IMG/VR virus record: IMGVR_UViG_3300029893_000001 | Location: 186,001-250,000 of that record | DNA length: 64,000 nt | Strand: one strand, 5' to 3' | In this document: positions 40,712 to 63,869 of the stretch, piece by piece | How the letters are laid out: each line of letters begins with the position of its first letter | Position numbering within the stretch: the first letter of the stretch is position 1 | The notes under the pieces: generated by a model | The model's database searches: none | What the model was told of the DNA's origin: nothing | The model's input: the letters and a program-made list of their open reading frames with translations, nothing else | Position numbers and translations under genes: made by a program

Positions 40712-40996
40712 CTACCTCGGAACAGCTCTCGGCGGGATAACATTTTGGACAGAACGAAATTTTGACGTTCCACCTGTACCAGTACCCTTTTCAAGGTCGG
40801 AGACGTCCTTCACATAATGCCCTGGGCCTGTTCGTGAATCCCCTCCGGGGAGATCGTTCATAGGCCCAGACCACCGGTCCTCCTCAGGAAGAGCGCCAGA
40901 AGAGTCATGGGGCAAAGAATCCAAGCCAGGTCCGGGCCCCTCGTCAGGACGACTAATTCTATCAACCTTGTTGAAATCTAGAAATCGGTGGCTCAT
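40712..40996 (-). CDS. Hypothetical low-complexity protein
   Basis: 94 aa, G/P/D-rich; GAGGAG RBS, ATGA overlap. Confidence 0.6.
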   Translation of the reverse strand: MSHRFLDFNKVDRISRPDEGPGPGLDSLPHDSSGALPEEDRWSGPMNDLPGGDSRTGPGHYVKDVSDLEKGTGTGGTSKFRSVQNVIPPRAVPR

Positions 40997-47497: not shown

Positions 47498-50400
47498 GAT
47501 GAACGTCTCCTTGCTGCTTCAGCAGTTTCTCGTGTCAAACGACGACGGTTTGGAAGCGGCTCGCCAGCCTGTCGAGGAATACTACCCTCATACCTTTCAG
47601 GTGGGCACGTATTGGGAGGCACCTCATTCGCAAAGATAGCAACTTGCTGGTTTCTGGAGGTGGTGTAAGCCGCAGCGCGTGCAGCCAAGCGCTCATTTCG
47701 AGCAATGATTGCACTTCGCTCCTGTTCCAGCCTACGGCGTCGTCTATCAGACACCCCGGAGGGGATCTCAGGAACAGGATCTGGAGCGAAGCGTGTGGGC
47801 TCGGCCGCCATCCTCAACGCTGGGATCCCCTTGAGACCAAACTGATCGTAATATTCTTGAAGAGAGATGACGTCAGAATCGGGTCCTGGGCGCCCCACAG
47901 TCTCTGCACGCGAAAAAGGTTCGCTGTTAGGGATGGGGTTGTAGAACAATACGAGGCGTGCGCCCAGCCCCAATGAACCATCACGCATACGTAAAAATCC
48001 TAAGTTGAATCGAGAAACGAGTTCTGGGTCCCAACGGGTCAAGAATTGAGCAAACTCGTCTCCAACACCACAGACCACTCTCATGCTTCCCTGAGTTCTA
48101 GCGCGCTCCGTAGCATCTGCCGCGGGTGTAGTCCCTGCGCGCCGCCGTTCTGCTGCAGTAACCACACGGAACTGTTTTCCTTCTCCAACGTAGCGCTGAA
48201 AAGCCGCTGACCCGAAGATCGCACCCGTTTCAAAGTGCAAATGAGTCTGAGTTTCTCGCTGTTCTGTCCCAGAAAACCCTGTATATGACACGATTTGATT
48301 TCGCTTCACCGTGGCGCCCAGCTCTACACCATCTGCAAGCCTGTTCTGATGCCGATAAAAGGTGACGAAACCATCTGCATGAATAAGACCCAACGACATT
48401 CCCTGACCAGGACGACCATTACGAGCTACCGACGGATGTGTGTAGAAGACAATACCATCGGCAACAGCGTAGCACGGCTCATCCAAATCCATAGGAATGT
48501 CGACACCAGGGTGCCAACCTCCCCCGCGAAGGCCAAAACCTGAGGTAACAATCCTGGGGAATTCGCCGGCAAACTGCCAGGTCCCTACACCACGATCAAT
48601 TTCTTCGTCAGGCAGTTGCCCGCGAGCATATCGATCAAGAATTGACCTACGTTCTCTACCTCCGGGTAGAGATCTCTTCCATGCCGCCCATCTGGGAACA
48701 GTCCTAACCGAGGGCCCCGTCGGAGCACTAAAGAAGCGTGGGTCTCCGGGGGAACACGTTGGTTCTTCGGAAGCCTCAGGGGGGTCGGCCGGCTCGACAT
48801 CATCAGACGGAGTAAGTGTCGACCGTACTCCTGTAACCCCTACACGGGGTCGCGCACCAGCCGGAGTATGAGTAGCCGAGGAGTCAAGTCCTCGCTCCCG
48901 TAGTGTTGCTTCCAGCTCTTCTACACGAGCACGAACTGCGTCCAAACGAGATGCTCGTTCTTCTTCAGTCAACGCGCCAGCGTTGCGAGTCAGTTCATCT
49001 AGCTCAGCCTCAAGCGCTCTGAGTTCTGTGACGACTGAGTCTTCCTCTCCTTCAGGACGCGAGGGAGCCCCCGAAAAAGCGGCGTCAATTACGTTGTACG
49101 TCGCCTGCCCATTTGGAATGATTGCGCGGTAGCGATCTTGAAGGGCCTGAAACTCCTGCTCCGTAAGAGACCTACCGTCGGTTCGGATCGTTCGGATCGC
49201 AGATTCGAAATCTCGCACTCTCTGCTGCAGAGACTGCACAACCGAGCGTCGTGGGTCCGCAGGAATGGCAAAGTACATAGGATGGGCAGGCCCACCTGTG
49301 ATGTAACGAGGAATACCAAGTTCGTCGTATGATCTAGTGTAGTTCAAAGTAATATTCATGGACGGAGGCTGCTGCCCGGCAATTTGCCCCGCCGTGACAG
49401 GAAGTGTCCAAGACAATCCGTCAACCAACGCAATTCTCTCTCTGTAGAGATTAAAAATGGGGCGGTTCAAAGTCAACCAAGGACGAAAAACCACACCAAG
49501 TTGATACCGGTCCGCAGCAGCCAAGAGCTTTTGGAACTCCAAAGTCGCTACCTGCTCCAACCTAGAAACATCTGTGATCTGTGGGTACGTAAGCACCTTG
49601 ACATTTAGTCCCAGACGAGATGCCAAATTTGGCGACCAGATGCCAACAGATCTGTCGGGATTGAGTGGCGTTATCTGTCCCTCATCAATATTCCCAATAC
49701 CAACGAACGAACCGTTTGCAAGGACAGCAGTAACTACCTCACCGCCTTCCTCGTCCATGCTTTCGTTTGTCAGATGATGATCCAGAGTAAGAATCTCAGA
49801 CCATGCTCCGTAATCCTCAGGGGCAAAGTCATACTGAGCGAATTCGAAAATCAGGTCACCACATCCAGAAACCCAGAATCTGTAGTCCGCAGTTTCACAT
49901 GCGTCAGTGAGGAGTTGTAGACGATTGGTCCAGTTAAGGTTGGCTGCAACATTGCCTGCACCGACTACTTCAATCGTCCACAAAAGGTCGTTCGGCGTAT
50001 TACGACCAGGAGACAAGAAATGAACTGCTTGTGCTTCTGGATGCCAAGCGCCTTCACGTCGTGTACTACGACCTGCTTCATGTACCTCTGCCTCTGTCCA
50101 GTATCTGCGGTTGCCGATGGAATGGTCTGGTGGTGCGTCCTCCACCAAAAGCCCCGCCCCTGAAGAAGGAGTGAAGTTATGACGACGAGGAGTACCAAAG
50201 ACACAGAGACTATACCAGTTCTGCATCCGTTGCTGGATCTGTCTGTTGGTGACAGCTCGACTAGCGCCGCGAGCAGCCGAAGGAAAATACGTCTCTAGAG
50301 CATAAGGCCTAGGTGGGTCGCCAAAGAGAGAGCCAAAGAAAGGAAATACACCAGGACGCATTCGACCAATCCGTCCTGCACCGCGGTGAACGGCTACTTC

Positions 50401-51936
50401 CCGTGACGTTCGAGCCGGGTCTACGGTAGACCCCTGCTGGGCGCCCGGCGGCGGCTGGGGAGCCGACGGATCCTCAGCCTCATCCTCTTCGACGGAGGTT
50501 CCTTGAAAGCTGCCCCTAGCGACATTAGCGGCTGCACTAGGTTCGACTCCGTAGCCCCTCAGAACTACCAACAGTTGTCTATACCGAGACCTTTCTGACT
50601 CAGAGAGAGTTGCTTCTCCACCCTCCTGCACTCGGCGGTGAAGAGGCTCAAACTCTGCTGCAGCGGCTCGAAGCTCTTCCTGTGCGGCCGACCTAGCCGT
50701 AGATCTTCCTCGAAACGCCCGATCTGCAGAAGCCTGCAGCAGCGAACCAGAAGTACTAGGCAAAAACGTGAGAGCGGAAATGAGTTCCGGAAGATTCAAA
50801 CTAGACCACGGGTTTGAGAGGCTTGAACCCGCGACCAAATCTGCGAAGAAGCCAGTGTTAAATTGACGATTGCCCTGCTCGGTATACGTCCTAAATACCT
50901 GAATCCCTGAAATAGGGCTCTCGTTTGTTGGGTCGGCTGCTGCAGTTGTCTGTGACCCAGGAAGGACCGCGAACATTGTGTTCGTGTTCACGCGCATCTT
51001 CGACATCAGAAGGCGAATATCAGCGCATGAGACAGAAATCGTGTTCAGGCCGTCAATATAGTTCTCTGTTACTGGCTTAGAAACAATGAATCCGGTGAAG
51101 ACAGGGATCCATTCGTCCAACTCAGACGCAGGGTTATGGATCCAAACGCGCACTGCGTCGTGTTTGTGAAAGACGGTACTCCATAAATGCAGGGGAAATC
51201 TCCGACCTCCTGAATCTGGGTCCACCGGATTGTAGTCCTCACGGCTTTTTCGTGAGTACATGTTGTACTTGACAGTCTCGTCGTAATCGAATGCGTTACC
51301 ACTACCCAGAGGAGAAGCCGTACGGAACTGTCCCTGCAAATTCTCTGGAGTAATAGTGAAACGATGCCCCGCATTGTCGAGCGTGAAGTCACACTTGTTG
51401 TAGTCCGTACCGAATCCATAGGTTACGGAAATCGTGCCGGTCAAAAACGGGGTAACATCCTCACCTTCGATGTATACGACTGCATCGTGATAGAAAACCT
51501 GATGAGGTCTCTCCACGAAGTAGTGCGGAGCGCTCCCACCGCGCACAGTCGGATCTGCCTCGCGTGATGCTGTGAGATCTGCCGAATCGCGTCGGACGTC
51601 ATCACCCTCAGATACGCGCGAAGAACTATCACTACCTACCTCGTCAGGAGAACGACGAGGGTCAGGAGCGCGCCCGTCCGACCCTTCTTCGTTGCCGGAC
51701 GAGTTAATGATCGATGAAGCAAGAGACTGCGCCTGCTCCCTCTCTTGTCGAGGAGTCGTTCCGTCTGCAGTCTGAGTGGTATCTACAACGGAGGGAGGAC
51801 TAAGAACACCATCAACAGGATCGGAGGGTACCTGCTCAATAACCTCAGGAGACCTAATAATGGCTTCGCCAGGTTCCGGGAGAAACCTGGCCTGACCTCC
51901 GCCGATTCTTCGATTGCTATCGCCGCCACCAGGCAT
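47494..51936 (-). CDS. Baseplate hub-like tail protein with M23 peptidase domain
   Basis: N-terminal hub-like 'VYIEGEDVT...F.LDN...VFTGFI'; M23 motifs TSGFG, HPGVD, YAVADG, YRH, HLHFE (~48230-48560). Confidence 0.85.
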   Translation of the reverse strand: MPGGGDSNRRIGGGQARFLPEPGEAIIRSPEVIEQVPSDPVDGVLSPPSVVDTTQTADGTTPRQEREQAQSLASSIINSSGNEEGSDGRAPDPRRSPDEVGSDSSSRVSEGDDVRRDSADLTASREADPTVRGGSAPHYFVERPHQVFYHDAVVYIEGEDVTPFLTGTISVTYGFGTDYNKCDFTLDNAGHRFTITPENLQGQFRTASPLGSGNAFDYDETVKYNMYSRKSREDYNPVDPDSGGRRFPLHLWSTVFHKHDAVRVWIHNPASELDEWIPVFTGFIVSKPVTENYIDGLNTISVSCADIRLLMSKMRVNTNTMFAVLPGSQTTAAADPTNESPISGIQVFRTYTEQGNRQFNTGFFADLVAGSSLSNPWSSLNLPELISALTFLPSTSGSLLQASADRAFRGRSTARSAAQEELRAAAAEFEPLHRRVQEGGEATLSESERSRYRQLLVVLRGYGVEPSAAANVARGSFQGTSVEEDEAEDPSAPQPPPGAQQGSTVDPARTSREVAVHRGAGRIGRMRPGVFPFFGSLFGDPPRPYALETYFPSAARGASRAVTNRQIQQRMQNWYSLCVFGTPRRHNFTPSSGAGLLVEDAPPDHSIGNRRYWTEAEVHEAGRSTRREGAWHPEAQAVHFLSPGRNTPNDLLWTIEVVGAGNVAANLNWTNRLQLLTDACETADYRFWVSGCGDLIFEFAQYDFAPEDYGAWSEILTLDHHLTNESMDEEGGEVVTAVLANGSFVGIGNIDEGQITPLNPDRSVGIWSPNLASRLGLNVKVLTYPQITDVSRLEQVATLEFQKLLAAADRYQLGVVFRPWLTLNRPIFNLYRERIALVDGLSWTLPVTAGQIAGQQPPSMNITLNYTRSYDELGIPRYITGGPAHPMYFAIPADPRRSVVQSLQQRVRDFESAIRTIRTDGRSLTEQEFQALQDRYRAIIPNGQATYNVIDAAFSGAPSRPEGEEDSVVTELRALEAELDELTRNAGALTEEERASRLDAVRARVEELEATLRERGLDSSATHTPAGARPRVGVTGVRSTLTPSDDVEPADPPEASEEPTCSPGDPRFFSAPTGPSVRTVPRWAAWKRSLPGGRERRSILDRYARGQLPDEEIDRGVGTWQFAGEFPRIVTSGFGLRGGGWHPGVDIPMDLDEPCYAVADGIVFYTHPSVARNGRPGQGMSLGLIHADGFVTFYRHQNRLADGVELGATVKRNQIVSYTGFSGTEQRETQTHLHFETGAIFGSAAFQRYVGEGKQFRVVTAAERRRAGTTPAADATERARTQGSMRVVCGVGDEFAQFLTRWDPELVSRFNLGFLRMRDGSLGLGARLVLFYNPIPNSEPFSRAETVGRPGPDSDVISLQEYYDQFGLKGIPALRMAAEPTRFAPDPVPEIPSGVSDRRRRRLEQERSAIIARNERLAARAAAYTTSRNQQVAIFANEVPPNTCPPERYEGSIPRQAGEPLPNRRRLTRETAEAARRRSS

Positions 51937-53804: not shown

Positions 53805-54085
53805 CGCAACACCATGATCTTCATGTTGGGTCTCTGTGGAAAGGCAGGTGCAGCAAGTAGAGGACGCACGCACAGCCACGCATCATTTACCATTCTAAAA
53901 TCCGTCTTCCCACAGCGATCCTTGACAATAGTCTTGAACCAATCGTAGATCTGCTCCACCTTCGTCTCAAAGAAATCGATATCGTATCCACCACCAGCAC
54001 GATTTGCGGGATCCTGATGGGTATCGACCAACAACAAAACGTGAGACTTGTTCAACGCTTCCCAAACAGGCGAAAAATCATCCAT
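53801..54085 (-). CDS. Hypothetical protein
   Basis: Likely start ATG 54085 (MDDFSPVW), GAGG RBS. Confidence 0.55.
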   Translation of the reverse strand: MDDFSPVWEALNKSHVLLLVDTHQDPANRAGGGYDIDFFETKVEQIYDWFKTIVKDRCGKTDFRMVNDAWLCVRPLLAAPAFPQRPNMKIMVLR

Positions 54086-55130
54086 CAGAAGCCTCTGCCA
54101 ATAGCGCAAGCTCAAGCAAAGATGAGATCTCAATCTCGGCTAAAGCCACCTCTTCCTCCGAGGCACCCTGCTGTTTTACACCAGCCAGAAGCTTGTCGCG
54201 AAGAGATCCGTCGACTCCCAACGAGAGCGAGTTGTCCCGAGGAACCAGTGCCACCTTCACTACGTTAGAAGGTAGTTCACTGGGAATATCCTCCTTAGAG
54301 TCGAACTTCCACTTAACGTACGAGTTAGGAGGAAGAGGATCTCCCTTCTTCGCCTCCACGAATCTGTTGGACTCAATAGGTACGAATTGAGGATCTTCAG
54401 GAGTAAGAGTGTCCACTACAAGAACACCCTTAGGCCAGGTATCGCTAAACTTCGTCTGCAGAGGCGAGCCACTATAGAAGGCATTCTTGCTTACCGCCTG
54501 CACCTTGTGAATGTCACCAAGGGCCCAATATGTCACCGGTAGAGCAGAATCCGGCGCATCCACACCATCCTTGAGTCTGTAATAGCTTCCATCTTTCATT
54601 TTGATGTCTGTCTGCGACCCCCGAACCGTCTCATGGGCTACGACCACAAAGTGATCGTGCGGAACCATGATAGATGAGGCCCTAAAACCTTCCACTGCAG
54701 ACCGAACATCCTCCTGGAACCTATGCTTACGATGGCACAAGAGACAAAAGACTGTGTCTCGGACAGAAACATAAGCAGTCTCTTCAGTCACGCACGAATG
54801 CTTGAATTTACCGTGCTTGTACAGCAAAGCCAAATAGTGAATGGCCGTATACCCGGTAGCATCAATCAGATCGTGATTACCAGGGATAACAAATATGTGA
54901 AAACCGGCTGCATCGTACTCCAGCAGTTTACGTTCGACCATCTCCCTCTCGGCCTGAGTAGTCGTTTCTGGGTCATCAAAGATATCCCCAGCAACCACAA
55001 CCGTATCGATGTCGTGGTCGTACGCTACGTCGAAGATGGAGTCAAACATCTCCTCTTGCCGCTTGAGGTAATTAGAAAGATAGCGGTTCGCTCCCACATG
55101 AAGATCTGCTGTATGGACAAACCTCATCAC
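54078..55130 (-). CDS. SbcD/Mre11-like metallophosphoesterase nuclease (gp47-like)
   Basis: HTADLH, AGDIFD, PGNHD, AHE, LGDIH, YSGSP motifs. Confidence 0.9.
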   Translation of the reverse strand: MMRFVHTADLHVGANRYLSNYLKRQEEMFDSIFDVAYDHDIDTVVVAGDIFDDPETTTQAEREMVERKLLEYDAAGFHIFVIPGNHDLIDATGYTAIHYLALLYKHGKFKHSCVTEETAYVSVRDTVFCLLCHRKHRFQEDVRSAVEGFRASSIMVPHDHFVVVAHETVRGSQTDIKMKDGSYYRLKDGVDAPDSALPVTYWALGDIHKVQAVSKNAFYSGSPLQTKFSDTWPKGVLVVDTLTPEDPQFVPIESNRFVEAKKGDPLPPNSYVKWKFDSKEDIPSELPSNVVKVALVPRDNSLSLGVDGSLRDKLLAGVKQQGASEEEVALAEIEISSLLELALLAEASDG

Positions 55131-55771
55131 AACTCCGGCAGAACACCTTCGTGTTTGAGGTAGTTCAGAATAGTTGCAGATGCCTGCTCCCGAGAGAAGA
55201 ATCCTCCGCCCTGTTCTCGATGAACGAGATACCGCTCTCCCGCCCGCTCCCAGAGCCTAATTTGGTCAATGCCAATCTGGTCTGTTGCAATCCTCATCTT
55301 GAAGCGAACCATGACAACTGGATGTCTTTTGCACATCAAGACAAGACCAAACCAACTAGCAACCCCGTCAGCAACCTTAGTTTTGTGGATGTTAAGAACG
55401 ACGAATAAGCTTCTATCCCGCAAAGCCTGAAGAACTCTCTCATACGCAGTTTCATCTATGACCGTGATTCCAATTGTATCCGCAATAAATTTGGCCATAG
55501 GCAGAATGAATCGAGCCTCAGCCGTCTTTACTGGCGGAGGTACCTCCGGATACGCTTCCGGCGTTCTATAAGAGAACTCATACGTATCATCGGGTCCAAT
55601 GATATCAGGATCCGTATTGCCCATCTGAATAGGCTGGTTCGTAACTGGGTCATAAATCCTAGGATCCAGACGAGCCTGAGGGTCTTGGGCCAAACGCCCA
55701 GCCCGGATCAAATCCAAGACAGAGTTCTCCGAACCCGTTGGGGGAGCAGGACGCTCATCGCTTGTACTCAT
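55127..55771 (-). CDS. Hypothetical protein
   Basis: 214 aa, overlapping both neighbours. Confidence 0.65.
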   Translation of the reverse strand: MSTSDERPAPPTGSENSVLDLIRAGRLAQDPQARLDPRIYDPVTNQPIQMGNTDPDIIGPDDTYEFSYRTPEAYPEVPPPVKTAEARFILPMAKFIADTIGITVIDETAYERVLQALRDRSLFVVLNIHKTKVADGVASWFGLVLMCKRHPVVMVRFKMRIATDQIGIDQIRLWERAGERYLVHREQGGGFFSREQASATILNYLKHEGVLPEL

Positions 55772-56292
55772 GAATTCCCCTGAATGTACGTCCTTACGAA
55801 GGATCTCCCAACCTTAGCGGCTGACTTTCGAGTCGTGCAGCGGGTATACTCGTCCTGAGTCTCACGACGCAGGGTAAGACCAGTAAGTCGTGCACCACCG
55901 TTGCCATAACTGGCGTGCAGACTGAACACGCGCTCGCCTCTTACAAAGATCGCGAACGGGATCCAGCGTACCCGCAAGAATCCCCTCTCTCGACGAGTTT
56001 TCACGTCTAAGAAATCAAAGACGCAGTAAGCTCCAAGTGTCAACTGGTTCTCATCTTTAGAGGAGAGGTCATCCAGACACGAAAGAGGAACACCCACCTC
56101 AGACGCCAACTCTGTTGCCAGCGGTTTCACTGACTCTTGGAATCGGAGAGAGTGAATTCTGAATCTGGTCTCCTGAAAATCGATGAGACGACGACCGGTA
56201 TCAATCGATACGATGGGATTTGCTCCCAAAGTCAAAGTTACCGATCGTCGCTGCATCGATTCAGGCTCAACACTGTGAGATGTGGTGGACAT
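55768..56292 (-). CDS. Hypothetical protein
   Basis: 174 aa downstream of recA. Confidence 0.6.
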   Translation of the reverse strand: MSTTSHSVEPESMQRRSVTLTLGANPIVSIDTGRRLIDFQETRFRIHSLRFQESVKPLATELASEVGVPLSCLDDLSSKDENQLTLGAYCVFDFLDVKTRRERGFLRVRWIPFAIFVRGERVFSLHASYGNGGARLTGLTLRRETQDEYTRCTTRKSAAKVGRSFVRTYIQGNS

Positions 56293-56309: not shown

Positions 56310-57650
56310 TCAGTCCCTCAGGATTTCTCCAAGGTCATCCTCATCTGAAACAACTGGCACCTTACGCCGCTTCTTTGGGACTTCCGTCATTTCCGACTCT
56401 AGAGCGACCTTTCCCTTTTTCCGCTTTGGACGAACTTTAGACGCCTCTGGCTCCGCTGGTGTTAGAACTGAGGCAATAGCCTCTAGCTCATTCTCTGCAT
56501 CCTCAGCAGCTTCCTCGTCAAAGTCATATAGAGACTCCCAATTGTTAGCACTGAAAAAGAGCTTGTACGCTAAATCAGATTCCAACTGAGTTCTGCAGGC
56601 AGACCTGAATTCGTTGGTACAGAGAACTCGCATCAAGTCGTCGGTGAAAAAGGCTTGATTATTCCACTCGAAGTCACCGTCTACCTGAAGACGGATCATT
56701 CTCTTGTTACCACTCTTCTCGACTTGACCAGTAAGCTCCAAGTAGCCCAAGCCATCACGGCCTCGCTCGTACCCCCGTCCGAAAGCCACGGTCATAGTTT
56801 CCGTGCACTCCAAGAAGGGAGGGAATTGCTTGTTCTTTTTGGTTGCAATATTGACGTACCTCATCGACCTATTACGTTCGACGAATGGCTGCTTAACGGC
56901 GCTCAAGCGGAATTTCAGATCAGGGTAGAACTTCCATGCCTGACCGCCAGGTTCGTACTCTGGATTACCAAACATCTGCCCAGGATTTAGTCGAGTTTGG
57001 TTTGTGGCGAATAACGACACATTCTTTCTACCCAGTTTCGACTTGACCAGGGGCAAATACATAGAGTGAACGGCAGCAGCCGCCGCCATTCTGACGTTCT
57101 CGTCGTCTTCTTCGATGGCCTCGGGGAGCATCGATGCAACCGAGTCAACAACGAACAAAGCCTGAGGAAGGGGACGCCCGCCCTCATTCGGTGTATAGTT
57201 CGGCAGAGCCCTAAGCAGACGAGCCATGGTTCTATAGGTTTGCTCTGCAGTATCGGGCTGATAGTAATGAAAGTAAGGATTCTTCCTACCGTCAGATAAG
57301 CGCATGCGGACTCCAAGGGCACGGAAGTACTTAGCGTCTGATGCTGTCTCGTGGTCGAAGAAAAATACCGGGATCTTCTGTCTGGTAGCATTGGCAATCA
57401 AATGACCAGCAGCAGTAGACTTACCACTTCCTTCCGGACCATAAGCATTAGTAACTTTCCCTGGTGGGAGCCCGCCCCCGGTCAAAAGATCGAGGATTAG
57501 AGAACCAAACGAAATTGCACCCTCAACATAAGAGCCACGGTCCAGCGAAACAGGTGGATTATCGGTGTCCTTACCAATCGTTTCAGCAAGCGCTGCAAGT
57601 TCATCAATATTTGTAACGTAGTTACGTTCAACGGTCTTCTTTTTTGCCAT
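56310..57650 (-). CDS. recA: RecA/UvsX-like recombinase
   Basis: LDLLTGGGLP.G, GPEGSGKST, DHE, VVDSVA, TNQ.R, PGG.A.KFY, KKNK..PPF; start set at ATG 57650 (AGGA RBS). Confidence 0.95.
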   Translation of the reverse strand: MAKKKTVERNYVTNIDELAALAETIGKDTDNPPVSLDRGSYVEGAISFGSLILDLLTGGGLPPGKVTNAYGPEGSGKSTAAGHLIANATRQKIPVFFFDHETASDAKYFRALGVRMRLSDGRKNPYFHYYQPDTAEQTYRTMARLLRALPNYTPNEGGRPLPQALFVVDSVASMLPEAIEEDDENVRMAAAAAVHSMYLPLVKSKLGRKNVSLFATNQTRLNPGQMFGNPEYEPGGQAWKFYPDLKFRLSAVKQPFVERNRSMRYVNIATKKNKQFPPFLECTETMTVAFGRGYERGRDGLGYLELTGQVEKSGNKRMIRLQVDGDFEWNNQAFFTDDLMRVLCTNEFRSACRTQLESDLAYKLFFSANNWESLYDFDEEAAEDAENELEAIASVLTPAEPEASKVRPKRKKGKVALESEMTEVPKKRRKVPVVSDEDDLGEILRD

Positions 57651-57681
57651 GTGAAGTTCCTGTGGGGGTATTAGTGTGAGT

Positions 57682-57713
57682 GAAGGAGTAAAGGAGTAAA
57701 GGATTGAAGGATG
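57682..57713. repeat. Four tandem 8-bp repeats in the recA leader
   Basis: gaaggagt aaaggagt aaaggatt gaaggatg on the + strand. Confidence 0.85.
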
Positions 57714-57736
57714 GGTCAACAGACCCTAAACTACGA

Positions 57737-59491
57737 CTAAGACTCTTCATCTTCCGAAGAGGGAACGATCCTGCCTTTTTCGTCGAAGACGACAAAGGAT
57801 CGCCAATCTTCACCAGAAGCACTTACATAGGGTCTTCCTGATTCCTTATCAATCAGGACACGAAGCCGGCTTCCAGACTCAGGGGAGCGAAAGGAGGGCC
57901 TCAGGCTCTTTTTGGCCATGAAAACTGCTGTTTCAGTAGCCCACTGCCAAAGGTCGTTGAAGAACTTCTCGAAGGTGAGATCTCCCCGCTCTACGGCAAG
58001 GATTTCTTCTTCAATCTCTGCGCAAAAATCAGGGTCTATTAAATCTGGGGCGGTTCGTCGGACAAAGGTCAGCACCGCCTCTCCCTTTGGAGTTATGCGA
58101 AGAAGGCCTCCTCCCAACGATTCTACGTACGAGTTGTGGTGAAGAAACTCAAGAGCGGGACGGTAGACCCAAGGTCGACCGATAAAGTGGGCATCTAACC
58201 AAGCAACTAACGTACCGTGAGTGTGGCGCTTAGGGGGTTTGGATGTCACTTCGAAAACTGAAGCTTCGACAACTGTGGAATCCGGCTCTAACGGACGAAT
58301 CGTGGGCTCAAACAGCCGCGAGCTAAGCTGATGCCACCCAGGCTCTACGAGCGAAAGACCTTCTGCACGGAAGACCTCTTCATCATCAAGAGCATAAGAA
58401 CAGTTATGCCGCTCAAATTGAGCAGGACGACCCTGAGAACCTAGAGTTCGAAACCAGATAGCCGAATAAATAGACTTCAGGTCTCCTGATAGGTCAAGCT
58501 GAGACGGTGCAAGGGAGATGTGGACTGGACGAATCGCTTCTAGCAACGAGGCAGAAGAAAACGTTGTTGGACTTTTCTCTGCCAGCTCAGCCGCCAACTT
58601 ATGGGTGACATGATCATGGATCCGTCGAGCAGCCTCAGGCGAGAGCCATGTAGAATCGGTGTACGGATAAGTAATTAGTCCCATCTCATACAAAGTGTCA
58701 CACACCCTAACGCAGGTAAGTGCGTCAATCCCATACCTCCAACTAGCAAACTGAATTATGGTGCTAAGAGTAAAGGGAGGTTGAACAGGGGCCAGTTCTC
58801 GTGCAGAGATAAACGCAGGCACTGCTGCTGCAGCTCTGCGCGCGATTTCCTGAGCGCGATTTTCAGACAGCGGTCCTGATTCTGCAGTCGAGCCATCAGA
58901 TAAGAGTGCTCGAACCACGAAGTACGAGTCAGATTTGAATTTTCTAATCTTCCGCTCGACACGAGCAAGCTCAGACAAGAGTGGAATGGCCGTACGATTT
59001 ACTTGTAGGCCCTCACCGAGTCGGGCTGCTAACACCGGAGACAGAGTGAAGTGGACAATCCGATCGGCTGCCTCCCTGGCAAGGTAGCTATTCAACGAAT
59101 TGGTGTTCAATTCTCCCGAGTTTTCTATTGCAGATTTCAAGCTTTCAACGTCCAAAGCCGTCAGTCGAATACGGCGGAACATCTTGTTGGCGTAAGAAGC
59201 AGTGATACTAATCTGATTCGCAATAGCTTCACCTTCGGGTGAAGAATCCGTTGCTGCGTAGACCACGTCAGCACGAGAAACCGCCTTCTTGATTCGTTCG
59301 AACGCCTGGATATTTCGAACCTTCCAAGTGAAGGCCAATGTTTTGGGGTCAATCCCTAATTGTGATTTGGGCAGCCCACAATAGTGTCGGTTACACGACA
59401 CCGCAACCCATCCGTCCAACGACGCTTTTCGGATGAGATCGCTGAAGAATCTCTTCTTCCCCTCAGACTCTACAACGATTAGAGAAGACAT
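57737..59491 (-). CDS. Type IA DNA topoisomerase-like protein with degenerate catalytic motifs
   Basis: LIVVES, ATDSSPEGEAIA, R..ADRIV, PFTLST, LYE.GLITYPYTDS, EAIRP, IGRP, ITPKG; TGATG-coupled to the thioredoxin-like gene. Confidence 0.9.
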   Translation of the reverse strand: MSSLIVVESEGKKRFFSDLIRKASLDGWVAVSCNRHYCGLPKSQLGIDPKTLAFTWKVRNIQAFERIKKAVSRADVVYAATDSSPEGEAIANQISITASYANKMFRRIRLTALDVESLKSAIENSGELNTNSLNSYLAREAADRIVHFTLSPVLAARLGEGLQVNRTAIPLLSELARVERKIRKFKSDSYFVVRALLSDGSTAESGPLSENRAQEIARRAAAAVPAFISARELAPVQPPFTLSTIIQFASWRYGIDALTCVRVCDTLYEMGLITYPYTDSTWLSPEAARRIHDHVTHKLAAELAEKSPTTFSSASLLEAIRPVHISLAPSQLDLSGDLKSIYSAIWFRTLGSQGRPAQFERHNCSYALDDEEVFRAEGLSLVEPGWHQLSSRLFEPTIRPLEPDSTVVEASVFEVTSKPPKRHTHGTLVAWLDAHFIGRPWVYRPALEFLHHNSYVESLGGGLLRITPKGEAVLTFVRRTAPDLIDPDFCAEIEEEILAVERGDLTFEKFFNDLWQWATETAVFMAKKSLRPSFRSPESGSRLRVLIDKESGRPYVSASGEDWRSFVVFDEKGRIVPSSEDEES

Positions 59492-59796
59492 CAAACAAGA
59501 ACCTTGCAAGCAGCGTCAATTACAGCTTCATCAAACAGACCTACAATCTTATGTTGTAGCTTCCCTTTAGCAAAAAGACGTAGTTGAGGTACCCGAACAC
59601 AAGCCAGCTCCTCAGTGGCTTGTGTTCGGGCGGAAACCTCGATAATCACTACCTGAAATCCTGAGGATCTAAGGCGACCCTCAACAGCAAAAAGCATTTG
59701 CCGGGATCTCATGCAAAGCTCATCATCGGGGTCAATGATGAGAACTGCTAGGTTTTCCTTTTGGCGAATTTGACTAAGAATCTGTTCGGCTTGCAT
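59491..59796 (-). CDS. Thioredoxin-fold protein lacking the CxxC motif
   Basis: C-terminal half VRVPQLRLFAKGKLQHKIVG matches Trx 'V.SIPT..F..G.....VG'; active-site position reads DDELC. Confidence 0.75.
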   Translation of the reverse strand: MQAEQILSQIRQKENLAVLIIDPDDELCMRSRQMLFAVEGRLRSSGFQVVIIEVSARTQATEELACVRVPQLRLFAKGKLQHKIVGLFDEAVIDAACKVLV

Positions 59797-59798
59797 AC

Positions 59799-59831
59799 AA
59801 AAGAGGGGCGGTTGATTACCGCCCCTCTTTT
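59799..59831. terminator. Intrinsic terminator hairpin after the SSB gene
   Basis: aaaagaggggcggt-tgatt-accgcccctctttt; perfect 14-bp inverted repeat with A4/T4 ends. Confidence 0.85.
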
Positions 59832-59839
59832 ACATATGC

Positions 59840-60928
59840 TCAGAGATCTCCGAAATCGTCATCGAAGTCATCATCGTCCTCTACCGGCGGACGCTTCTTC
59901 TTCTTCGCCTTAGGCGGAGGAGAATCTTCCTCATCATCGTCATCGTCCTCTACCGGCGGACGCTTCTTTTTAGGTGGAAGCGAGTCTTCGTCGTCCTCGT
60001 CATCTACTGGACGCTTCTTCTTCGCCTTCGGCGGCGGAGGAGAATCCTCCTCCTCCTCGTCGTCGTCCTCGAAGTCGTCGTCCTCTACCGGCGCACGCTT
60101 CTTCTTCGCCTTCGGCGGCGGAGGAGAATCCTCCTCCTCGTCGTCCTCGAAGTCGTCATCGTTCACTGGCTTTCTCTTGGAAGGCTTGCCCGCCGAAGGC
60201 TTAGGAGACTCAAAATCATCCTCGTCATCATCTACTGGACGCTTTTTGGAGCCTTTTCTCGGAAGAGACTCTGTTTCCTCGTCATCCGATTTAGTATCGA
60301 AGTAGCCATGCCTCTTGAGGTCTTCACGAATCTTGTGAATGTCGGGCTCTTGATAGAACTCGTCAAACGAGATAAGCTCAAGAGACGTCTCCTCCTCGGA
60401 CAGAGGAGAGCGATCTCCTTTCTGGACCTGCCACTCTACACCGCCACGCTTCTTACTGCGCTGCTTCTGCAGATGGATATCGCACCCAAGCTTTGGGTGC
60501 GCGATGGACTTAGGCTCGCCTTTGACCATGTTCAGCTTCTTGAGGTCAAGGAGCTGTCGCATGACAGTAGGAGGGACATCCAGTGCTCGAATTGGATCCG
60601 CATCGCCACGATTCTGTGCAGTCCGGTCAATGACATTCATCATGTAACGAACACTAGGGCGCAGGCCCACTTCACAAGCAGGGCATCCTCCCTTTTTCGA
60701 AGAGGATTCGCTATCAGGATCCCAGTTCGCGCAGTCTACGGGATAGCGCTTCTTTTCGCCCGTCTTATTGACGAACTCGATCCAATGTTGTGCGTAACTG
60801 AATACGCCGCCCACGATCCGGAAGGGATACCATTCATCCATCTTGGGTAGCTCAGCTACCGAAATGTCTTCCTTCCAGTTTTTGTCGCGGGTACGAGGGT
60901 TTGTATCATCGAAATCTTTGAGTGCCAC
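59840..60928 (-). CDS. Single-stranded DNA-binding protein (gp32-like) with repetitive acidic/basic tail
   Basis: FRIVG...QHW...C...CPAC...YMMNVIDR...GCDI core with Zn ligands; ~150-aa D/E/K/P tail ending DFDDDFGDL. Confidence 0.8.
   Translation of the reverse strand: MALKDFDDTNPRTRDKNWKEDISVAELPKMDEWYPFRIVGGVFSYAQHWIEFVNKTGEKKRYPVDCANWDPDSESSSKKGGCPACEVGLRPSVRYMMNVIDRTAQNRGDADPIRALDVPPTVMRQLLDLKKLNMVKGEPKSIAHPKLGCDIHLQKQRSKKRGGVEWQVQKGDRSPLSEEETSLELISFDEFYQEPDIHKIREDLKRHGYFDTKSDDEETESLPRKGSKKRPVDDDEDDFESPKPSAGKPSKRKPVNDDDFEDDEEEDSPPPPKAKKKRAPVEDDDFEDDDEEEEDSPPPPKAKKKRPVDDEDDEDSLPPKKKRPPVEDDDDDEEDSPPPKAKKKKRPPVEDDDDFDDDFGDL
59843..60290 (-). repeat. Imperfect coding repeats (about 5-6 units) in the SSB tail
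   Basis: Units such as EEEDSPPPPKAKKKRxPVEDDD; nucleotide motifs tcctctaccggcg and cgcttcttcttcgcctt recur. Confidence 0.9.
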
Positions 60929-60992: not shown

Positions 60993-62225
60993 TTAGAGGG
61001 CAGATACCTGCCTAAGTCTTTCTGCCTTGACCTTTTGGGGGTCGAGCTTCTGAGAAACATACTCTGTTAGGCCATAGGCCAAACAGACTAGGTTCCGAAG
61101 GTTGTCAGGGAGCGAGTCAAGAAGGACTTTTACAGAATCAGAAGGATCATAATCAAGTGGGTCTGACTGTTCTTCTTGGGATTCAATGATAGAGGAAATA
61201 GGAGTTGAGGATCCATCTGGTTTGAGGGGGTAGTCGAGAGATCGAACCTGTGACGTCCGAACTGTACTATAGATAGCGTCTACATGGCTTCTCGAATACC
61301 CAGAAACACGAGAAAGTTCTTCAGTAGTCAGAGGACCAGACTGAGATTCTTGCTTTAGTCGAATAGCCTCTAACTTAGCGTAGTGTTGCCAGGTGTTCGA
61401 TGATACCCGGATCAAATTAGAGTCTTCTTTCAGGTAGTACAGCATACTTTGCCGTATCCACCACCGAGCGTGACCCACAAATCTCGCGTTTGAGACTTCG
61501 TCGTAAGACGAAATAGCCCGAAGCAAGCCGAAGCTTCCATTCTGGAAACAGTCGAGCGCGTGGTCCTCCGAAACAGCTTGGGCTTTCGCCTGCTTCAGGA
61601 TTACCCTTGAGTATGCGTTGAATACTCGTTCATAGATCTCTTGAAGTGCAGCTAAGCGTTCAGCAATATAGCGAACGATCCCAAAAGCTGTTCTCGGATC
61701 CAGGCGGCAATCCTGTTCTAAATAATGACACGCGGCATCCGCTGCGGACGCTTCCTCTAAGTCGTCGTTCAAATGAGCCAACAAACTTCGGTGGGAGGCT
61801 TCCTGGTACTGAGAAGCCTTAGAGCACCAGTCCTTCAAGAATTGTTCAAACACCATCCGAGTAAGAGGGAGGGCCAGAACAATATCTAGCTGGCGGTCTT
61901 TATCTCCGTCTAATGTGGCAGCCTGCAAGTCCATGCAAGCGCACAAAAAATCAGCCTCTCGCTGCTCCGGGTCCACCGGGACGTCCTTCACGGACCCATC
62001 GATAAAGGCGATCGATCTTCGATAGATTGCTTTATTGCGGTCTAGGTTGGAAGCTACTTCCGCCCCCAGAGCTATTACACCTAGTTGGATGTAATCATTT
62101 TCTCTCAACAGCAAACGAACGCAATCATAGACAAGCAAAGACGCTCGACTGAACAGGGGAAACAATTCTTCTTGGGTAAGCGTATCCCCTGAGTTGACAG
62201 TCTCGATCAACGTCCGCGCAGTCAT
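60993..62225 (-). CDS. Sigma70-family RNA polymerase sigma factor, region 4 degenerate/truncated
   Basis: Region 2 DCFQNGSFGLLRAISSYD...RFVGHARWWIRQSM; region 3 LIRV...T.EELS...SLDYP; start at the TGATG overlap 62225. Confidence 0.88.
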   Translation of the reverse strand: MTARTLIETVNSGDTLTQEELFPLFSRASLLVYDCVRLLLRENDYIQLGVIALGAEVASNLDRNKAIYRRSIAFIDGSVKDVPVDPEQREADFLCACMDLQAATLDGDKDRQLDIVLALPLTRMVFEQFLKDWCSKASQYQEASHRSLLAHLNDDLEEASAADAACHYLEQDCRLDPRTAFGIVRYIAERLAALQEIYERVFNAYSRVILKQAKAQAVSEDHALDCFQNGSFGLLRAISSYDEVSNARFVGHARWWIRQSMLYYLKEDSNLIRVSSNTWQHYAKLEAIRLKQESQSGPLTTEELSRVSGYSRSHVDAIYSTVRTSQVRSLDYPLKPDGSSTPISSIIESQEEQSDPLDYDPSDSVKVLLDSLPDNLRNLVCLAYGLTEYVSQKLDPQKVKAERLRQVSAL

Positions 62226-62686
62226 CAAGTTAGCTGCCTTAGGCGGTCGTTTATAGACACTCTGGGAGATTGCTGACGCAGTCGCTGCATCTCCGTTGAG
62301 TTCGTTGCAAGCAGAGTCTCGGCTAATTTGAGCAAGTGCGGGCATAGTCCTGGTTTCTGGAACCCCCTGAGTTTTTCAGGGATGTCTTCCGGTCCGACTC
62401 TCATGTCTGTGGCCCCCATAGTGTAGAGAGCAGGGGCACATCGTACCTTGAAGTACGCACAGGAACACGAAACTTTAGCGGACGCAGCCGGATCAATCTC
62501 CTCAGAATAAATCCTGATCACGGACTTACGCGGATCCTTTCCCCCGGAAATTACCGCAAGGAATTGGATAAAGTCCCCCAAGTTATCAGACTCTTTACGG
62601 GTTTTGAGGGCCTCAACCTTGTACTCCGTCTTAAAACGACGGCGGTCCGGCTGAGTAACGACCAAAAGCTGACTCAATGTAAGCAT
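62225..62686 (-). CDS. SWIM-type zinc-finger protein
   Basis: KVSCSCAYF...PGLCPHL; paralog of 14609..15385. Confidence 0.75.
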   Translation of the reverse strand: MLTLSQLLVVTQPDRRRFKTEYKVEALKTRKESDNLGDFIQFLAVISGGKDPRKSVIRIYSEEIDPAASAKVSCSCAYFKVRCAPALYTMGATDMRVGPEDIPEKLRGFQKPGLCPHLLKLAETLLATNSTEMQRLRQQSPRVSINDRLRQLT

Positions 62687-63053: not shown

Positions 63054-63869
63054 TTACAGTTCGTCCCAGGCCCCCATGGAAAAGAGCAAGAAGTCGTACT
63101 TCAAAGGGTCACGTGAATCAAGCTGAAGTAGACTATGGGTGATATCTTCGGCGCATCTCCAGGTGCTACCAGATCTTGCCGTCAATCCCAGCTTAAAACT
63201 CACCCTGCGGACGTGTGTGTCGAGTGGAACAATTAGCTTGTCCAAAGATATACCAGACCACAACCCTAAGTCTACCTCGTCTTTCCTGAACATCCATCTC
63301 ATCAACATGTTCAAGCGCTTACACGCCCCTCCCGCGGCAGGGTTTGGCAACAAGTAGGCAAACCCTGCCGACCCTCCTGAAGGAGCGCCACACCCAGAGA
63401 AGTCGAGGGTACGCAGAGTCCTCACAAAAGAGGTAAGTTGTGTTTTGGTCAAAGAAGGGGCAGTAGGGCAGGCATCCGCAACCAACACGCTCTCCAAAGA
63501 ACCAAAAACTTGAAGTACATGCTGCACAGAAAAGAGCAAGCACCTCAAATCCTCTGGCTTGTTGAATCTATAGCAAAACCAGTCAAAGCTTCTCTTATAC
63601 CCGCCACTCATCACAAAGTCATAGGGAGAAGAACCCATCTCCTGAAGTATCTTAGACACCACAGGAATGAACACCTTCCTCTGCCCGTAAGCAAGCGATG
63701 AAGCAATCAGTGCGACGACCTCTGCATCGTGAGGAGAATGGGCATAAGGATAAACAAGTCCAACAGGGTCCTCCTTCTCAGCGTGAAGGCGGAGTGACGT
63801 CCCCAAAGAGGCGAGGCGCCCGTCGAGAAGATCTCGAAGGCGCCCCAATTGCGTCTGATTCAGCTTCAT
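63054..63869 (-). CDS. TIGR02757/DUF2400 family protein (HhH-GPD glycosylase-like)
   Basis: DP...D.E..ALIASSLAYG, YRF, ACKRLNM.MRWM.R.D.VDLGLW, LIVPLDTHV, DPLKYDF.LF motifs. Confidence 0.88.
   Translation of the reverse strand: MKLNQTQLGRLRDLLDGRLASLGTSLRLHAEKEDPVGLVYPYAHSPHDAEVVALIASSLAYGQRKVFIPVVSKILQEMGSSPYDFVMSGGYKRSFDWFCYRFNKPEDLRCLLFSVQHVLQVFGSLESVLVADACPTAPSLTKTQLTSFVRTLRTLDFSGCGAPSGGSAGFAYLLPNPAAGGACKRLNMLMRWMFRKDEVDLGLWSGISLDKLIVPLDTHVRRVSFKLGLTARSGSTWRCAEDITHSLLQLDSRDPLKYDFLLFSMGAWDEL

What the first reader, a model, noticed from the sequence alone, without database searches (positions are those of the whole stretch)
56310..60928. Candidate new system: SSB, redox-degenerate thioredoxin, degenerate topoisomerase IA and RecA in one cluster
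Seen: two consecutive, TGATG-coupled genes have both lost canonical active-site residues yet remain full-length and uninterrupted. They sit between an intact SSB and an intact RecA. Known: topo IA is a toroid that binds ssDNA, and thioredoxin acts non-enzymatically as the processivity factor of T7 family A polymerase; this phage also has a family A polymerase. Inference: the pair may be repurposed as a non-catalytic ssDNA clamp, processivity or recombination-mediator complex, or as a decoy for host factors.
Basis: partly seen in the sequence, partly recalled or inferred. Interest (0 to 1): 0.8.

Follow-up and report, generated by a model that had tools for sequence, protein, structure and literature searches.

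The report
Eroded topoisomerase paired with redox-dead thioredoxin
A group of uncultivated giant phages keeps, between its DNA-binding and recombination genes, a topoisomerase-like ring protein whose cutting site has eroded and, just upstream, a thioredoxin-like protein that cannot do redox chemistry; the pair probably binds DNA as a non-enzymatic complex, but this is untested.

Summary
On the minus strand lie a gp32-like SSB (59840-60928), a 101-aa thioredoxin-fold protein with C-M-R-S in place of CxxC (59491-59796), a 584-aa type IA topoisomerase homolog (57737-59491, joined to it by TGATG) and an intact RecA/UvsX-like recombinase (56310-57650).

- **Topo-like protein.** It models as a complete TopA toroid. 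It keeps E9, K13, D111, E115 and the nucleophile Tyr. It has lost D113, R169, R321, H365 and R507.
- **Conservation of the pair.** The window is part of a 392-kb jumbo-phage contig. The Trx-like/topo-like pair, always overlapping by 1-11 nt, occurs in 14 loci where both genes were read, with topo identity down to 23%.
- **Selection.** Synonymous sites are saturated while dN is only 0.22-0.46, so this is not decay.
- **Erosion pattern.** Different lineages have lost different catalytic residues. The Tyr is lost twice, D111 is replaced by four different residues, and one lineage keeps DxDxE, Tyr and Lys. The conserved function therefore probably does not need the cleavage-religation cycle.
- **Caveats.** Two short, distant contigs place the Trx-like gene directly before RecA, without a topo gene. 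No family A polymerase was found in the window.

The mechanism is inferred: a non-catalytic ssDNA-binding complex acting in recombination. I found no published description.

The parts
59840..60928 (-). gp32-like single-strand DNA-binding protein (362 aa). The C-terminal half is made of acidic/basic proline-rich repeats and ends in an acidic-aromatic tip.
   Evidence: ORF. PHROG 15004, E 1.5e-19. No Pfam or PDB sequence hit. 64-81% identical orthologs sit at the same position in relatives.
59491..59796 (-). Thioredoxin-fold protein without a redox motif (101 aa). It has [C/S]-x-R-[S/A] in place of CxxC, keeps the cis-Pro, and carries the conserved motif C-V-R-V-P-Q-L-R-x-F.
   Evidence: AF2 pLDDT 83 with the Trx fold. 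Foldseek matches thioredoxins at TM about 0.8. The profile search finds about 30 small relatives, none with a second Cys, and true PF00085 thioredoxins at the weak end.
59489..59493 (-). TGATG stop/start overlap joining the Trx-like and topo-like genes.
   Evidence: Coordinates and junction sequences. A 1-11 nt overlap is present in all 14 loci where both genes were read.
57737..59491 (-). Type IA topoisomerase homolog with a remodelled active site (584 aa). It has the full four-domain toroid plus a small Cys-less beta domain at the C-terminus, and no zinc fingers.
   Evidence: PF01131 E 1.8e-55. Below the TIGR01051 cut-off. AF2 pLDDT 93.7 and pTM 0.88. Foldseek matches E. coli TopA 4rul at TMq 0.82 and E 7.5e-42.
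56310..57650 (-). RecA/UvsX-like recombinase (446 aa from the ATG) with the catalytic motifs intact.
   Evidence: PF00154 E 1.6e-31 and PHROG 97 UvsX-like E 4.4e-56. Alignment to E. coli RecA is. Orthologs are 424-488 aa.
54078..56292 (-). Collinear downstream genes: two proteins of unknown function (174 aa and 214 aa) and an SbcD/Mre11-like nuclease (350 aa).
   Evidence: TIGR00619 sbcd scores 84 bits against a cut-off of 77.65. The same order is seen in all relatives.
60993..62345 (-). Sigma-70-like factor gene immediately upstream of the SSB gene. It is part of the same collinear block.
   Evidence: PF04542 E 1.4e-7 and PHROG 351 E 2.4e-20.

Best explanation
A clade of uncultivated jumbo phages encodes a translationally coupled pair: a thioredoxin-fold protein that cannot carry out dithiol redox chemistry, and a type IA topoisomerase homolog.

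Shown:
- The folds of both proteins.
- The missing residues.
- The pairing of the two genes.
- Purifying selection on both.
- The topo homolog keeps the whole toroid and part of the ssDNA groove, while its cleavage-religation centre has eroded differently in different lineages.

Inferred:
- The two proteins form a complex. The Trx-like protein would use its conserved former active-site face (R30, the C66-to-P70 cis-Pro loop, G86) as a binding surface, as host thioredoxin does on T7 DNA polymerase.
- The complex binds or encircles single-stranded DNA without completing strand passage.
- It acts together with the neighbouring gp32-like SSB, RecA/UvsX-like recombinase and SbcD-like nuclease in recombination-dependent replication or repair, for example by handing over or holding ssDNA.
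For: **Fold and homology**
- for the topo-like protein.
- for the Trx-like protein.

**Active-site state against E. coli TopA and 18-27 bacterial TopA, in which all these residues are invariant**
- R169, H365, R507 and Q197 are lost in all 17 paired homologs.
- R321 is Y, F, M or D in 14, K in 2 and R in 1.
- D113 is lost in 13.
- D111 is L, Y, S or N in four lineages.
- Y319 is Q in P0009 and P0010 (and in the partial L016 copy) and N in L025.
- Only E9, G116, E117 and a few others are universal.
- Of 114 positions invariant in bacterial TopA, 22 are kept in at least 15 of 17 homologs and 18 are replaced in all 17.

**Published mutagenesis**
- D111N, D113N, G116S and R321W in E. coli TopA, and R364W in TOP3A, impair resealing (PMC10079683).
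- R169A cuts relaxation about 150-fold and changes the preferred base at -4 (PMC3467081).

**Phylogeny**
- The paired homologs are separated from bacterial TopA by one branch with 100/100 support.
- The most eroded members have end branches of 2-2.6, against 0.25-0.64 in the bacterial rows.

**Selection**
- dS is saturated in nearly all pairs.
- dN is 0.22-0.46 for the topo gene, 0.14-0.60 for the Trx gene and 0.12-0.20 for RecA.
- All ORFs are intact.

**Linkage**
- The Trx-like gene overlaps the topo-like gene in 14 of 14 loci where both were read.
- These include homologs only 23-28% identical to the window's.

**Trx-like family**
- No member has the second cysteine, and the first is C or S.
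- The most conserved residues fall on the canonical Trx substrate-binding face.
Against: - No interaction data exist and no co-folding tool was available. The complex is inferred from gene coupling alone, and 1-4 nt overlaps are common among neighbouring genes in this block.
- The window's own protein keeps E9, K13, H33, D111, E115 and Y319. The L026/L027 lineage keeps DxDxE, Tyr and Lys321. Catalysis may therefore persist in parts of the family.
- E9 is invariant in all 17 homologs, which a purely structural role does not obviously explain.
- In two short, distant contigs (L019, L021) the Trx-like gene is followed directly by RecA with no topo gene. The Trx-like protein may therefore have another or an additional partner.
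- The recombination role rests only on gene neighbourhood within a long collinear block.
Confidence: 0.45

Rival explanations
1. The topo-like protein is still an active but highly divergent type IA topoisomerase. The Trx-like protein is its accessory subunit, as RMI1 is for TOP3A or TDRD3 for TOP3B. It might supply missing positive charge, since it has invariant arginines, or regulate the gate.
For: - E9, K13, H33, D111, E115 and Y319 are kept in the window's clade.
- L026/L027 keep DxDxE, Tyr and Lys321, and L020 keeps Tyr and Arg321.
- Every member except L025 has a Tyr at position 319 or 321.
- E9 is universal.
- The Trx-like family has invariant R11, R30, R68 and R73 in the window's clade.
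- Solved TOP3A-RMI1 and TOP3B-TDRD3 complexes appear among the structural matches.
Against: - No single set of catalytic residues is conserved across the family.
- L025 has neither Tyr nor D111 nor E115, yet it is a full-length, coupled ORF.
- P0009 and P0010 lack Y319.
- D111 is replaced in four lineages by four different residues.
- R169, H365 and R507 are absent everywhere.
- Single substitutions at D113 or R321 already cripple resealing in E. coli TopA (PMC10079683).
Confidence: 0.25
2. The Trx-like protein works with RecA/UvsX, SSB or a polymerase rather than with the topo-like protein. Its adjacency to the topo gene is inherited synteny without a physical complex.
For: - L019 and L021 have SSB, Trx-like and RecA in that order, or Trx-like followed by RecA, with no topo gene between.
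- The whole block is collinear in all relatives.
- Thioredoxin serves as a non-redox subunit of T7 DNA polymerase (1t7p is among the fold matches).
Against: - The overlap with the topo gene is kept even where flanking genes differ. L020 has an extra 221-aa gene upstream, and several loci have an extra 74-121 aa ORF only on the RecA side.
- No PolA was found in the window.
- The topo-less cases come from one divergent subgroup on contigs of 633-1120 nt.
Confidence: 0.15
3. The topo-like protein is a natural self-trapping enzyme. It cleaves ssDNA and stays covalently bound to the 5' end. It would act once per molecule, for example to cap phage DNA ends or to damage host DNA.
For: - The window's clade combines Y319, E9 and D111 with changes at D113 and R321.
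- D113N and R321W in E. coli TopA, and the equivalent Arg-to-Trp changes in TOP3A and TOP3B, make the enzyme accumulate cleavage complexes (PMC10079683).
Against: - The nucleophile Tyr is not conserved across the family (Q in P0009 and P0010, N in L025).
- D111 is lost in four lineages.
- R169, H365 and R507, which position the substrate, are also gone.
- Nothing in the window points to protein-linked genome ends.
Confidence: 0.08
4. The two genes are simply decaying and have no function.
For: They evolve about twice as fast as RecA, SSB and SbcD.
Against: - Full-length ORFs are kept in all 17 genomes, down to 23% identity.
- dN is far below the saturated dS.
- Both AF2 models are very confident.
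- Family-specific motifs are conserved.
Confidence: 0.02

Closest known systems
Bacterial DNA topoisomerase I (TopA, type IA; E. coli, T. maritima)
   Same: Same four-domain toroid, with Foldseek TMq about 0.8. Sequence homology at E 1e-38 to 1e-39. The Toprim Glu, K13, part of the G-strand groove (R168, D172, R173, F177) and, in this copy, the Tyr are present.
   Different: About 25% identity. It fails the TIGR01051 equivalog cut-off, 196 against 456 bits. D113, R169, R321, H365, R507 and Q197 are replaced. There are no zinc-ribbon C-terminal domains, only one small Cys-less beta domain. It is always preceded by a Trx-like gene, and its catalytic residues are not conserved across the family.
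T7 gene 5 DNA polymerase with E. coli thioredoxin
   Same: A thioredoxin fold used, there certainly and here presumably, as a non-redox structural subunit of a phage DNA-handling protein. The conserved residues of the phage family lie on the face that Trx uses for binding.
   Different: T7 borrows the host's redox-competent Trx and binds it to a family A polymerase thumb. Here the Trx-like protein is phage-encoded, lacks CxxC throughout the family, and is coupled to a topo IA homolog or RecA. No PolA was found in the window.
TOP3A-RMI1 and TOP3B-TDRD3
   Same: A type IA topoisomerase toroid working with a small dedicated partner protein in recombination-related transactions on ssDNA (structures listed).
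   Different: Those partners are OB-fold proteins and the topoisomerases are catalytically active. Nothing here shows that the Trx-like protein contacts the gate.
Engineered self-trapping type IA mutants (EcTopA D111N, D113N, G116S, R321W; TOP3A R364W; TOP3B R338W)
   Same: Two of the positions changed in the window's clade, D113 and R321, are among those whose mutation blocks resealing (PMC10079683).
   Different: Those are single laboratory mutations in otherwise intact enzymes. The phage family carries many further losses and does not conserve the nucleophile.
T4-type recombination module (gp32, UvsX, UvsY, gp46/47)
   Same: A gp32-like SSB, a UvsX/RecA-like recombinase and an SbcD/Mre11-like nuclease are clustered.
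   Different: No UvsY homolog was recognised. The Trx-like and topo-like pair and two unknown proteins occupy the intervening positions. A mediator role for any of them is conjecture.

Membership tests
Type IA DNA topoisomerase (catalytic enzyme) | Four-domain toroidal fold (Toprim plus domains II-IV) | tested here: met
   AF2 pLDDT 93.7. Foldseek matches 4rul, 1ecl and 2gai at TMq 0.79-0.82. PF01131 scores 189 bits against a GA of 35.
Type IA DNA topoisomerase (catalytic enzyme) | Nucleophilic tyrosine (E. coli Y319) | tested here: met
   Present in the window's protein (I-T-Y-P-Y). It is Q in P0009 and P0010 (and in the partial L016 copy) and N in L025.
Type IA DNA topoisomerase (catalytic enzyme) | Toprim acidic set: E9 plus the D111-x-D113-x-E115 motif | tested here: not met
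   E9, D111 and E115 are present, but D113 is Ser. The Pfam Toprim match is below threshold, 21.2 against 23.1 bits.
Type IA DNA topoisomerase (catalytic enzyme) | Strictly conserved active-site Arg next to the Tyr (R321), plus H365 | tested here: not met
   R321 is Tyr and H365 is Leu. Both are invariant in the 27 bacterial TopA sequences compared.
Type IA DNA topoisomerase (catalytic enzyme) | NCBIfam equivalog score for bacterial TopA (TIGR01051) | tested here: not met
   196.4 bits against a cut-off of 456.4.
Type IA DNA topoisomerase (catalytic enzyme) | Mg2+-dependent relaxation of negative supercoils through a 5'-phosphotyrosyl intermediate | not testable with these tools
   Needs biochemistry.
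Thioredoxin (PF00085) redox protein | Thioredoxin fold with a cis-Pro loop | tested here: met
   AF2 model. Foldseek TM about 0.8 to many thioredoxins. P70 aligns with the cis-Pro.
Thioredoxin (PF00085) redox protein | W-C-G-P-C dithiol motif | tested here: not met
   The motif reads L-C-M-R-S here and [C/S]-x-R-[S/A] in the clade. No family member has the second Cys.
Thioredoxin (PF00085) redox protein | Sequence-level homology to the family | tested here: inconclusive
   No Pfam hit for the single protein, and PDB phmmer gives E 0.6-1. The family profile does reach true PF00085 proteins at library-wide E of 1.5e-15 to 8e-4.
RecA/UvsX recombinase | RecA core with Walker A, catalytic Glu, Walker B and the L2 loop | tested here: met
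   PF00154 scores 110 bits against a GA of 27. Alignment to E. coli RecA. It is below the TIGR02012 equivalog cut-off, 114 against 325 bits, so it is a divergent phage-type member.
gp32-like phage SSB | Match to a phage SSB family; OB fold | tested here: inconclusive
   PHROG 15004 E 1.5e-19 over residues 111-278. No Pfam or PDB sequence match. The fold was not modelled.

The most novel reading that the evidence does not exclude
A type IA topoisomerase toroid has been converted into a non-catalytic ssDNA clamp or recombination mediator in jumbo phages. It works as an obligate heterodimer with a redox-dead thioredoxin. I know of no described pseudo-topoisomerase IA, and this would be a second, independent recruitment of the thioredoxin fold as a structural subunit of phage DNA machinery.
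Probability: 0.3. Interest if true: 0.75.

Novelty: new variant of a known kind. Interest (0 to 1): 0.62.

Why it matters
Type IA topoisomerases are treated as strictly conserved enzymes. A whole family that keeps the ring but lets the catalytic centre erode would show that the toroid has a selectable function apart from strand passage. It would also give natural variants at exactly the positions (D111, D113, R321) used to engineer self-trapping enzymes. The coupled CxxC-less thioredoxin would add to the known non-redox uses of that fold in phage DNA metabolism. Because the pair sits between the SSB and the recombinase, it is a candidate for the missing accessory factors of recombination-dependent replication in uncultivated jumbo phages.

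Tried and rejected
- **Nucleotide search against GenBank phages:** no match. tblastn gave only TopA-like hits at or below 28% identity.
- **Word-index search with the Trx-like protein alone:** found only itself. The family appeared only with a profile.
- **dN/dS:** NG86 dS is undefined or above 1.9 in all pairs because of saturation, so only the bound dN much smaller than dS can be stated.
- **Loci scan with the broad 30-sequence Trx alignment:** Scans with subgroups A5 and A7 found nothing in IMG/VR.
- **Fusions of Trx-like and topo-like domains:** the long hits of the profile search are ordinary multi-thioredoxin proteins, not fusions.
- **Defence-system libraries:** only a partial match of the Toprim region to DpdF (E 2e-7) and generic nuclease hits for SbcD. 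I did not treat these as membership.
- **Family A polymerase in the window:** not found.
- **Literature:** no description of such a pair in searches or in the jumbo-phage comparative review PMC7824862.
- **Co-folding of the pair:** no tool allowed it, and I did not try fused sequences.
Full report
**What is there.** All genes of the region lie on the minus strand.
- 60993-62345 encodes a sigma-70-like factor.
- 59840-60928 encodes a 362-aa protein that matches a phage SSB family (PHROG 15004, E 1.5e-19). It has no Pfam or PDB sequence match.
- 59491-59796 encodes a 101-aa protein with no family hit.
- 57737-59491 encodes a 584-aa protein with a strong Topoisom_bac match (PF01131, E 1.8e-55) and a sub-threshold Toprim match.
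- 56310-57650 encodes a RecA/UvsX-like recombinase (PF00154 E 1.6e-31; PHROG 97 E 4.4e-56).
- Downstream lie two unknown proteins and an SbcD/Mre11-like nuclease.
- The stop of the 101-aa gene and the ATG of the topo-like gene share base 59491, giving TGATG.

The window is part of IMGVR_UViG_3300029893_000001, a 392-kb contig, so this is an uncultivated jumbo phage. The rest of the window is mostly tail, baseplate and tape-measure genes plus an SNF2 helicase. I found no family A polymerase in it.

**The small protein is a thioredoxin without redox chemistry.**
- The AlphaFold model built on eight orthologs has pLDDT 83 and pTM 0.75, with the alpha-beta-alpha-beta-alpha-beta-beta-alpha order of thioredoxin.
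- Foldseek places it among classical thioredoxins (TM about 0.8, E about 5e-6, probability 1.00). These include E. coli thioredoxin bound to T7 DNA polymerase.
- In place of W-C-G-P-C it has L-C-M-R-S. In orthologs the first position is C or S and the last is S or A, while the arginine between them and the cis-Pro loop (C-V-R-V-P-Q-L-R-x-F) are invariant.
- A profile of the family, searched against 1.84 billion representative proteins, found 40 hits. About 30 are small relatives, and none has the second cysteine. Genuine PF00085 thioredoxins appear only at the weak end.
- Homology to thioredoxin is therefore established at profile and fold level. Redox function through a dithiol is excluded for the whole family.

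**The large protein is a complete type IA toroid with a remodelled centre.**
- The model has pLDDT 93.7 and pTM 0.88. It superposes on full-length E. coli TopA (4rul, TMq 0.82, E 7.5e-42) and other TopA structures.
- A small Cys-less beta domain stands where TopA has its first zinc ribbon.
- I took E. coli numbering from the MG1655 topA gene and aligned with MAFFT. The window's protein keeps E9, K13, H33, D111, E115, G116, R168, D172, R173, T318, Y319, T322 and D323.
- It has S for D113, E for R169, P for M320, Y for R321, L for H365, N for R507 and A for Q197. All of these are invariant in the 18-27 bacterial TopA sequences compared.
- It scores 196 bits against the 456-bit cut-off of the TopA equivalog model.
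- Published mutagenesis shows that D111N, D113N, G116S and R321W each make E. coli TopA accumulate cleavage complexes because resealing fails. The equivalent Arg-to-Trp change does the same in human TOP3A and TOP3B (PMC10079683).
- R169A lowers relaxation about 150-fold and changes the preferred base at -4 (PMC3467081).

**Relatives.**
- A word-index search found ten close homologs (41-72% identity, about 580 aa, PF01131 only). After them come only bacterial TopA at 29% or less.
- I fetched their contigs and scanned IMG/VR and JGI metagenomes with family alignments. This gave 17 distinct topo-like proteins from Trx-paired or collinear loci, down to 23% identity.
- In every one of the 14 loci where both genes could be read, the Trx-like gene lies immediately upstream and overlaps the topo-like gene by 1-11 nt.
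- One gene call had missed the Trx-like gene, but the ORF is there.
- RecA follows, sometimes after an extra 74-121 aa ORF.
- The wider block is collinear too: sigma-like, SSB, Trx-like, topo-like, RecA, two unknowns, SbcD, four small genes and the M23-peptidase tape measure. Short overlaps are common within it.
- Four-gene synteny is therefore not specific evidence. The Trx-topo junction, however, survives where the flanks differ (L020, L017).

**Selection.**
- Synonymous differences are saturated in nearly every pair.
- dN is 0.22-0.46 for the topo-like gene, 0.14-0.60 for the Trx-like gene and 0.12-0.20 for RecA.
- Protein identity to the window's copies runs 42-71% (topo), 39-63% (Trx) and 62-83% (RecA) over the same genomes.
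- Both genes thus evolve about twice as fast as RecA but are clearly under purifying selection. Simple decay is excluded.

**The erosion pattern.**
- R169, H365, R507 and Q197 are gone in all 17 homologs.
- Beyond that, the losses differ by lineage:

| Lineage | State of the catalytic residues |
|---|---|
| Window's clade | D-x-S/G-x-E; Tyr present, followed at position 321 by Tyr, Phe or Met |
| P0009/P0010 (and the partial L016 copy) | Gln in place of the nucleophile Tyr |
| L023 | D111 replaced by Leu |
| L017 | D111 and D113 replaced by Ser; R321 replaced by Phe |
| L020 | D111 replaced by Asn; E115 replaced by Ala; Tyr and Arg321 kept |
| L026/L027 | Intact DxDxE, Tyr and Lys321 |
| L025 | No Tyr, no D111, no E115; still a 570-aa ORF overlapping its Trx-like gene |

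- Only E9, G116, E117, R136 and a few others are universal.
- Of 114 positions invariant in bacterial TopA, 22 are kept in at least 15 of 17 homologs and 18 are replaced in all.
- In a maximum-likelihood tree the paired proteins are split from bacterial TopA by one branch with 100/100 support.
- The most eroded members have end branches of 2-2.6 changes per site, against 0.25-0.64 in the bacterial rows.
- This is the pattern expected when the fold and some binding surfaces are under selection but the chemistry is not.

**Interpretation.**
- The best-supported reading is that the conserved function of this family does not need the cleavage-religation cycle. The toroid would act as an ssDNA-binding or encircling module, with the Trx-like protein as its partner.
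- The complex itself is inferred from the conserved gene overlap. A second argument is that the Trx-like family's conserved residues occupy the former active-site face, which thioredoxin uses to bind partners.
- A role alongside SSB, RecA and SbcD in recombination-dependent replication is inferred from position only.
- Three rivals remain:
  1. Residual or altered catalysis with the Trx-like protein as an accessory subunit. This is plausible for L026/L027 and not excluded for the window's copy.
  2. A Trx-like protein that really serves RecA or SSB. Two short contigs of a divergent subgroup, L019 and L021, have Trx-like followed directly by RecA without a topo gene.
  3. A self-trapping enzyme that stays covalently bound to DNA, suggested by the D113 and R321 changes but weakened by the non-conserved Tyr.

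**Comparison with the known.** The nearest families are bacterial TopA and thioredoxin. Each fails a defining catalytic feature here, so I do not file either as a functional member. Conceptual parallels are T7 gp5 with thioredoxin, and TOP3A-RMI1 and TOP3B-TDRD3. I found no description of a Trx-paired or catalytically eroded type IA homolog in the literature searches or in the comparative jumbo-phage review PMC7824862. A negative full-text search is not proof of novelty.

**Verdict.**
- The non-catalytic reading is supported by comparative evidence, but the mechanism is untested.
- The polymerase-processivity analogy and the four-gene 'system' boundary are not supported.
- Interest is moderate to high for topoisomerase and phage-replication specialists.

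Noticed in passing
window 59840-60300 (C-terminal half of the SSB-like protein): The C-terminal part of the SSB-like protein (roughly its last 150 residues) consists of about four repeats of an acidic run followed by S-P-P-P-P-K-A-K-K-K-R. It ends in an acidic-aromatic tip (D-D-D-F-D-D-D-F-G-D-L). Orthologs end similarly (L010, L014, L016). This recalls the acidic C-terminal tails through which E. coli SSB and T4 gp32 recruit partners, and it could be the docking site for the topo-like protein or RecA.
   Followed up: partly
L019 685-1120; L021 135-632: In a divergent subgroup of the Trx-like family (P0064, P0065, P0067) the gene is followed directly by a RecA/UvsX-like gene. In L019 it is preceded by the SSB-like gene, with no topo-like gene between. 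The contigs are only 633-1120 nt, so a topo-like gene elsewhere cannot be excluded.
   Followed up: partly
L002/L003 4609-4950 (L003 coordinates); L008 7761-8126; L017 2277-2609; L020 7034-7258: Some relatives carry an extra 74-121 aa ORF between the topo-like gene and RecA (weak DUF3467 hit in L017). The window has no such gene: only 17 nt separate the topo stop from the TTG at 57719, the farthest possible RecA start.
   Followed up: no
L004/L005 3950-6625; L008 1829-4465 and 1-314: In relatives, a gene of 878-887 aa occupies the position of the window's sigma-like gene and has intein-splicing plus LAGLIDADG hits. A ribonucleotide reductase gene there also has intein hits. The window's copy (60993-62345) is intein-free.
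   Followed up: no
window 57737-59491, residues 44-197: The Toprim and adjacent region gives a partial match (E 2e-7) to PADLOC model DpdF of the Dpd 7-deazaguanine DNA-modification defence system. This suggests that DpdF contains a related Toprim/topo-IA-like module.
   Followed up: no
window 60993-62686: The sigma-like ORF as listed (450 aa) overlaps the upstream 153-aa ORF (62225-62686) by about 120 nt. Some orthologs are 410 aa and others (L011) are 450 aa. The true start in the window may therefore lie further downstream.
   Followed up: no
window 1-52000: The rest of the window is mostly virion genes. These include a baseplate J/wedge protein (40993-42393), tail-fibre-like proteins (12770-14608, 16018-19755) and a 1480-aa tape-measure-like protein with an M23 peptidase domain (47494-51936). 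There is also a 1402-aa SNF2-family helicase (1806-6014). Many large ORFs (741, 747 and 1687 aa) have no family match at all.
   Followed up: partly
window 63054-63869: A DUF2400 protein (E 1.6e-62) lies upstream of the sigma-like gene. In relatives it sits next to ribonucleotide reductase genes.
   Followed up: no
L010 5696-6001: The public gene call for this contig missed the Trx-like ORF and called a 44-aa gene on the opposite strand instead. The ORF is intact and ends in the same TGATG junction. Automated annotation may therefore under-count this family.
   Followed up: yes
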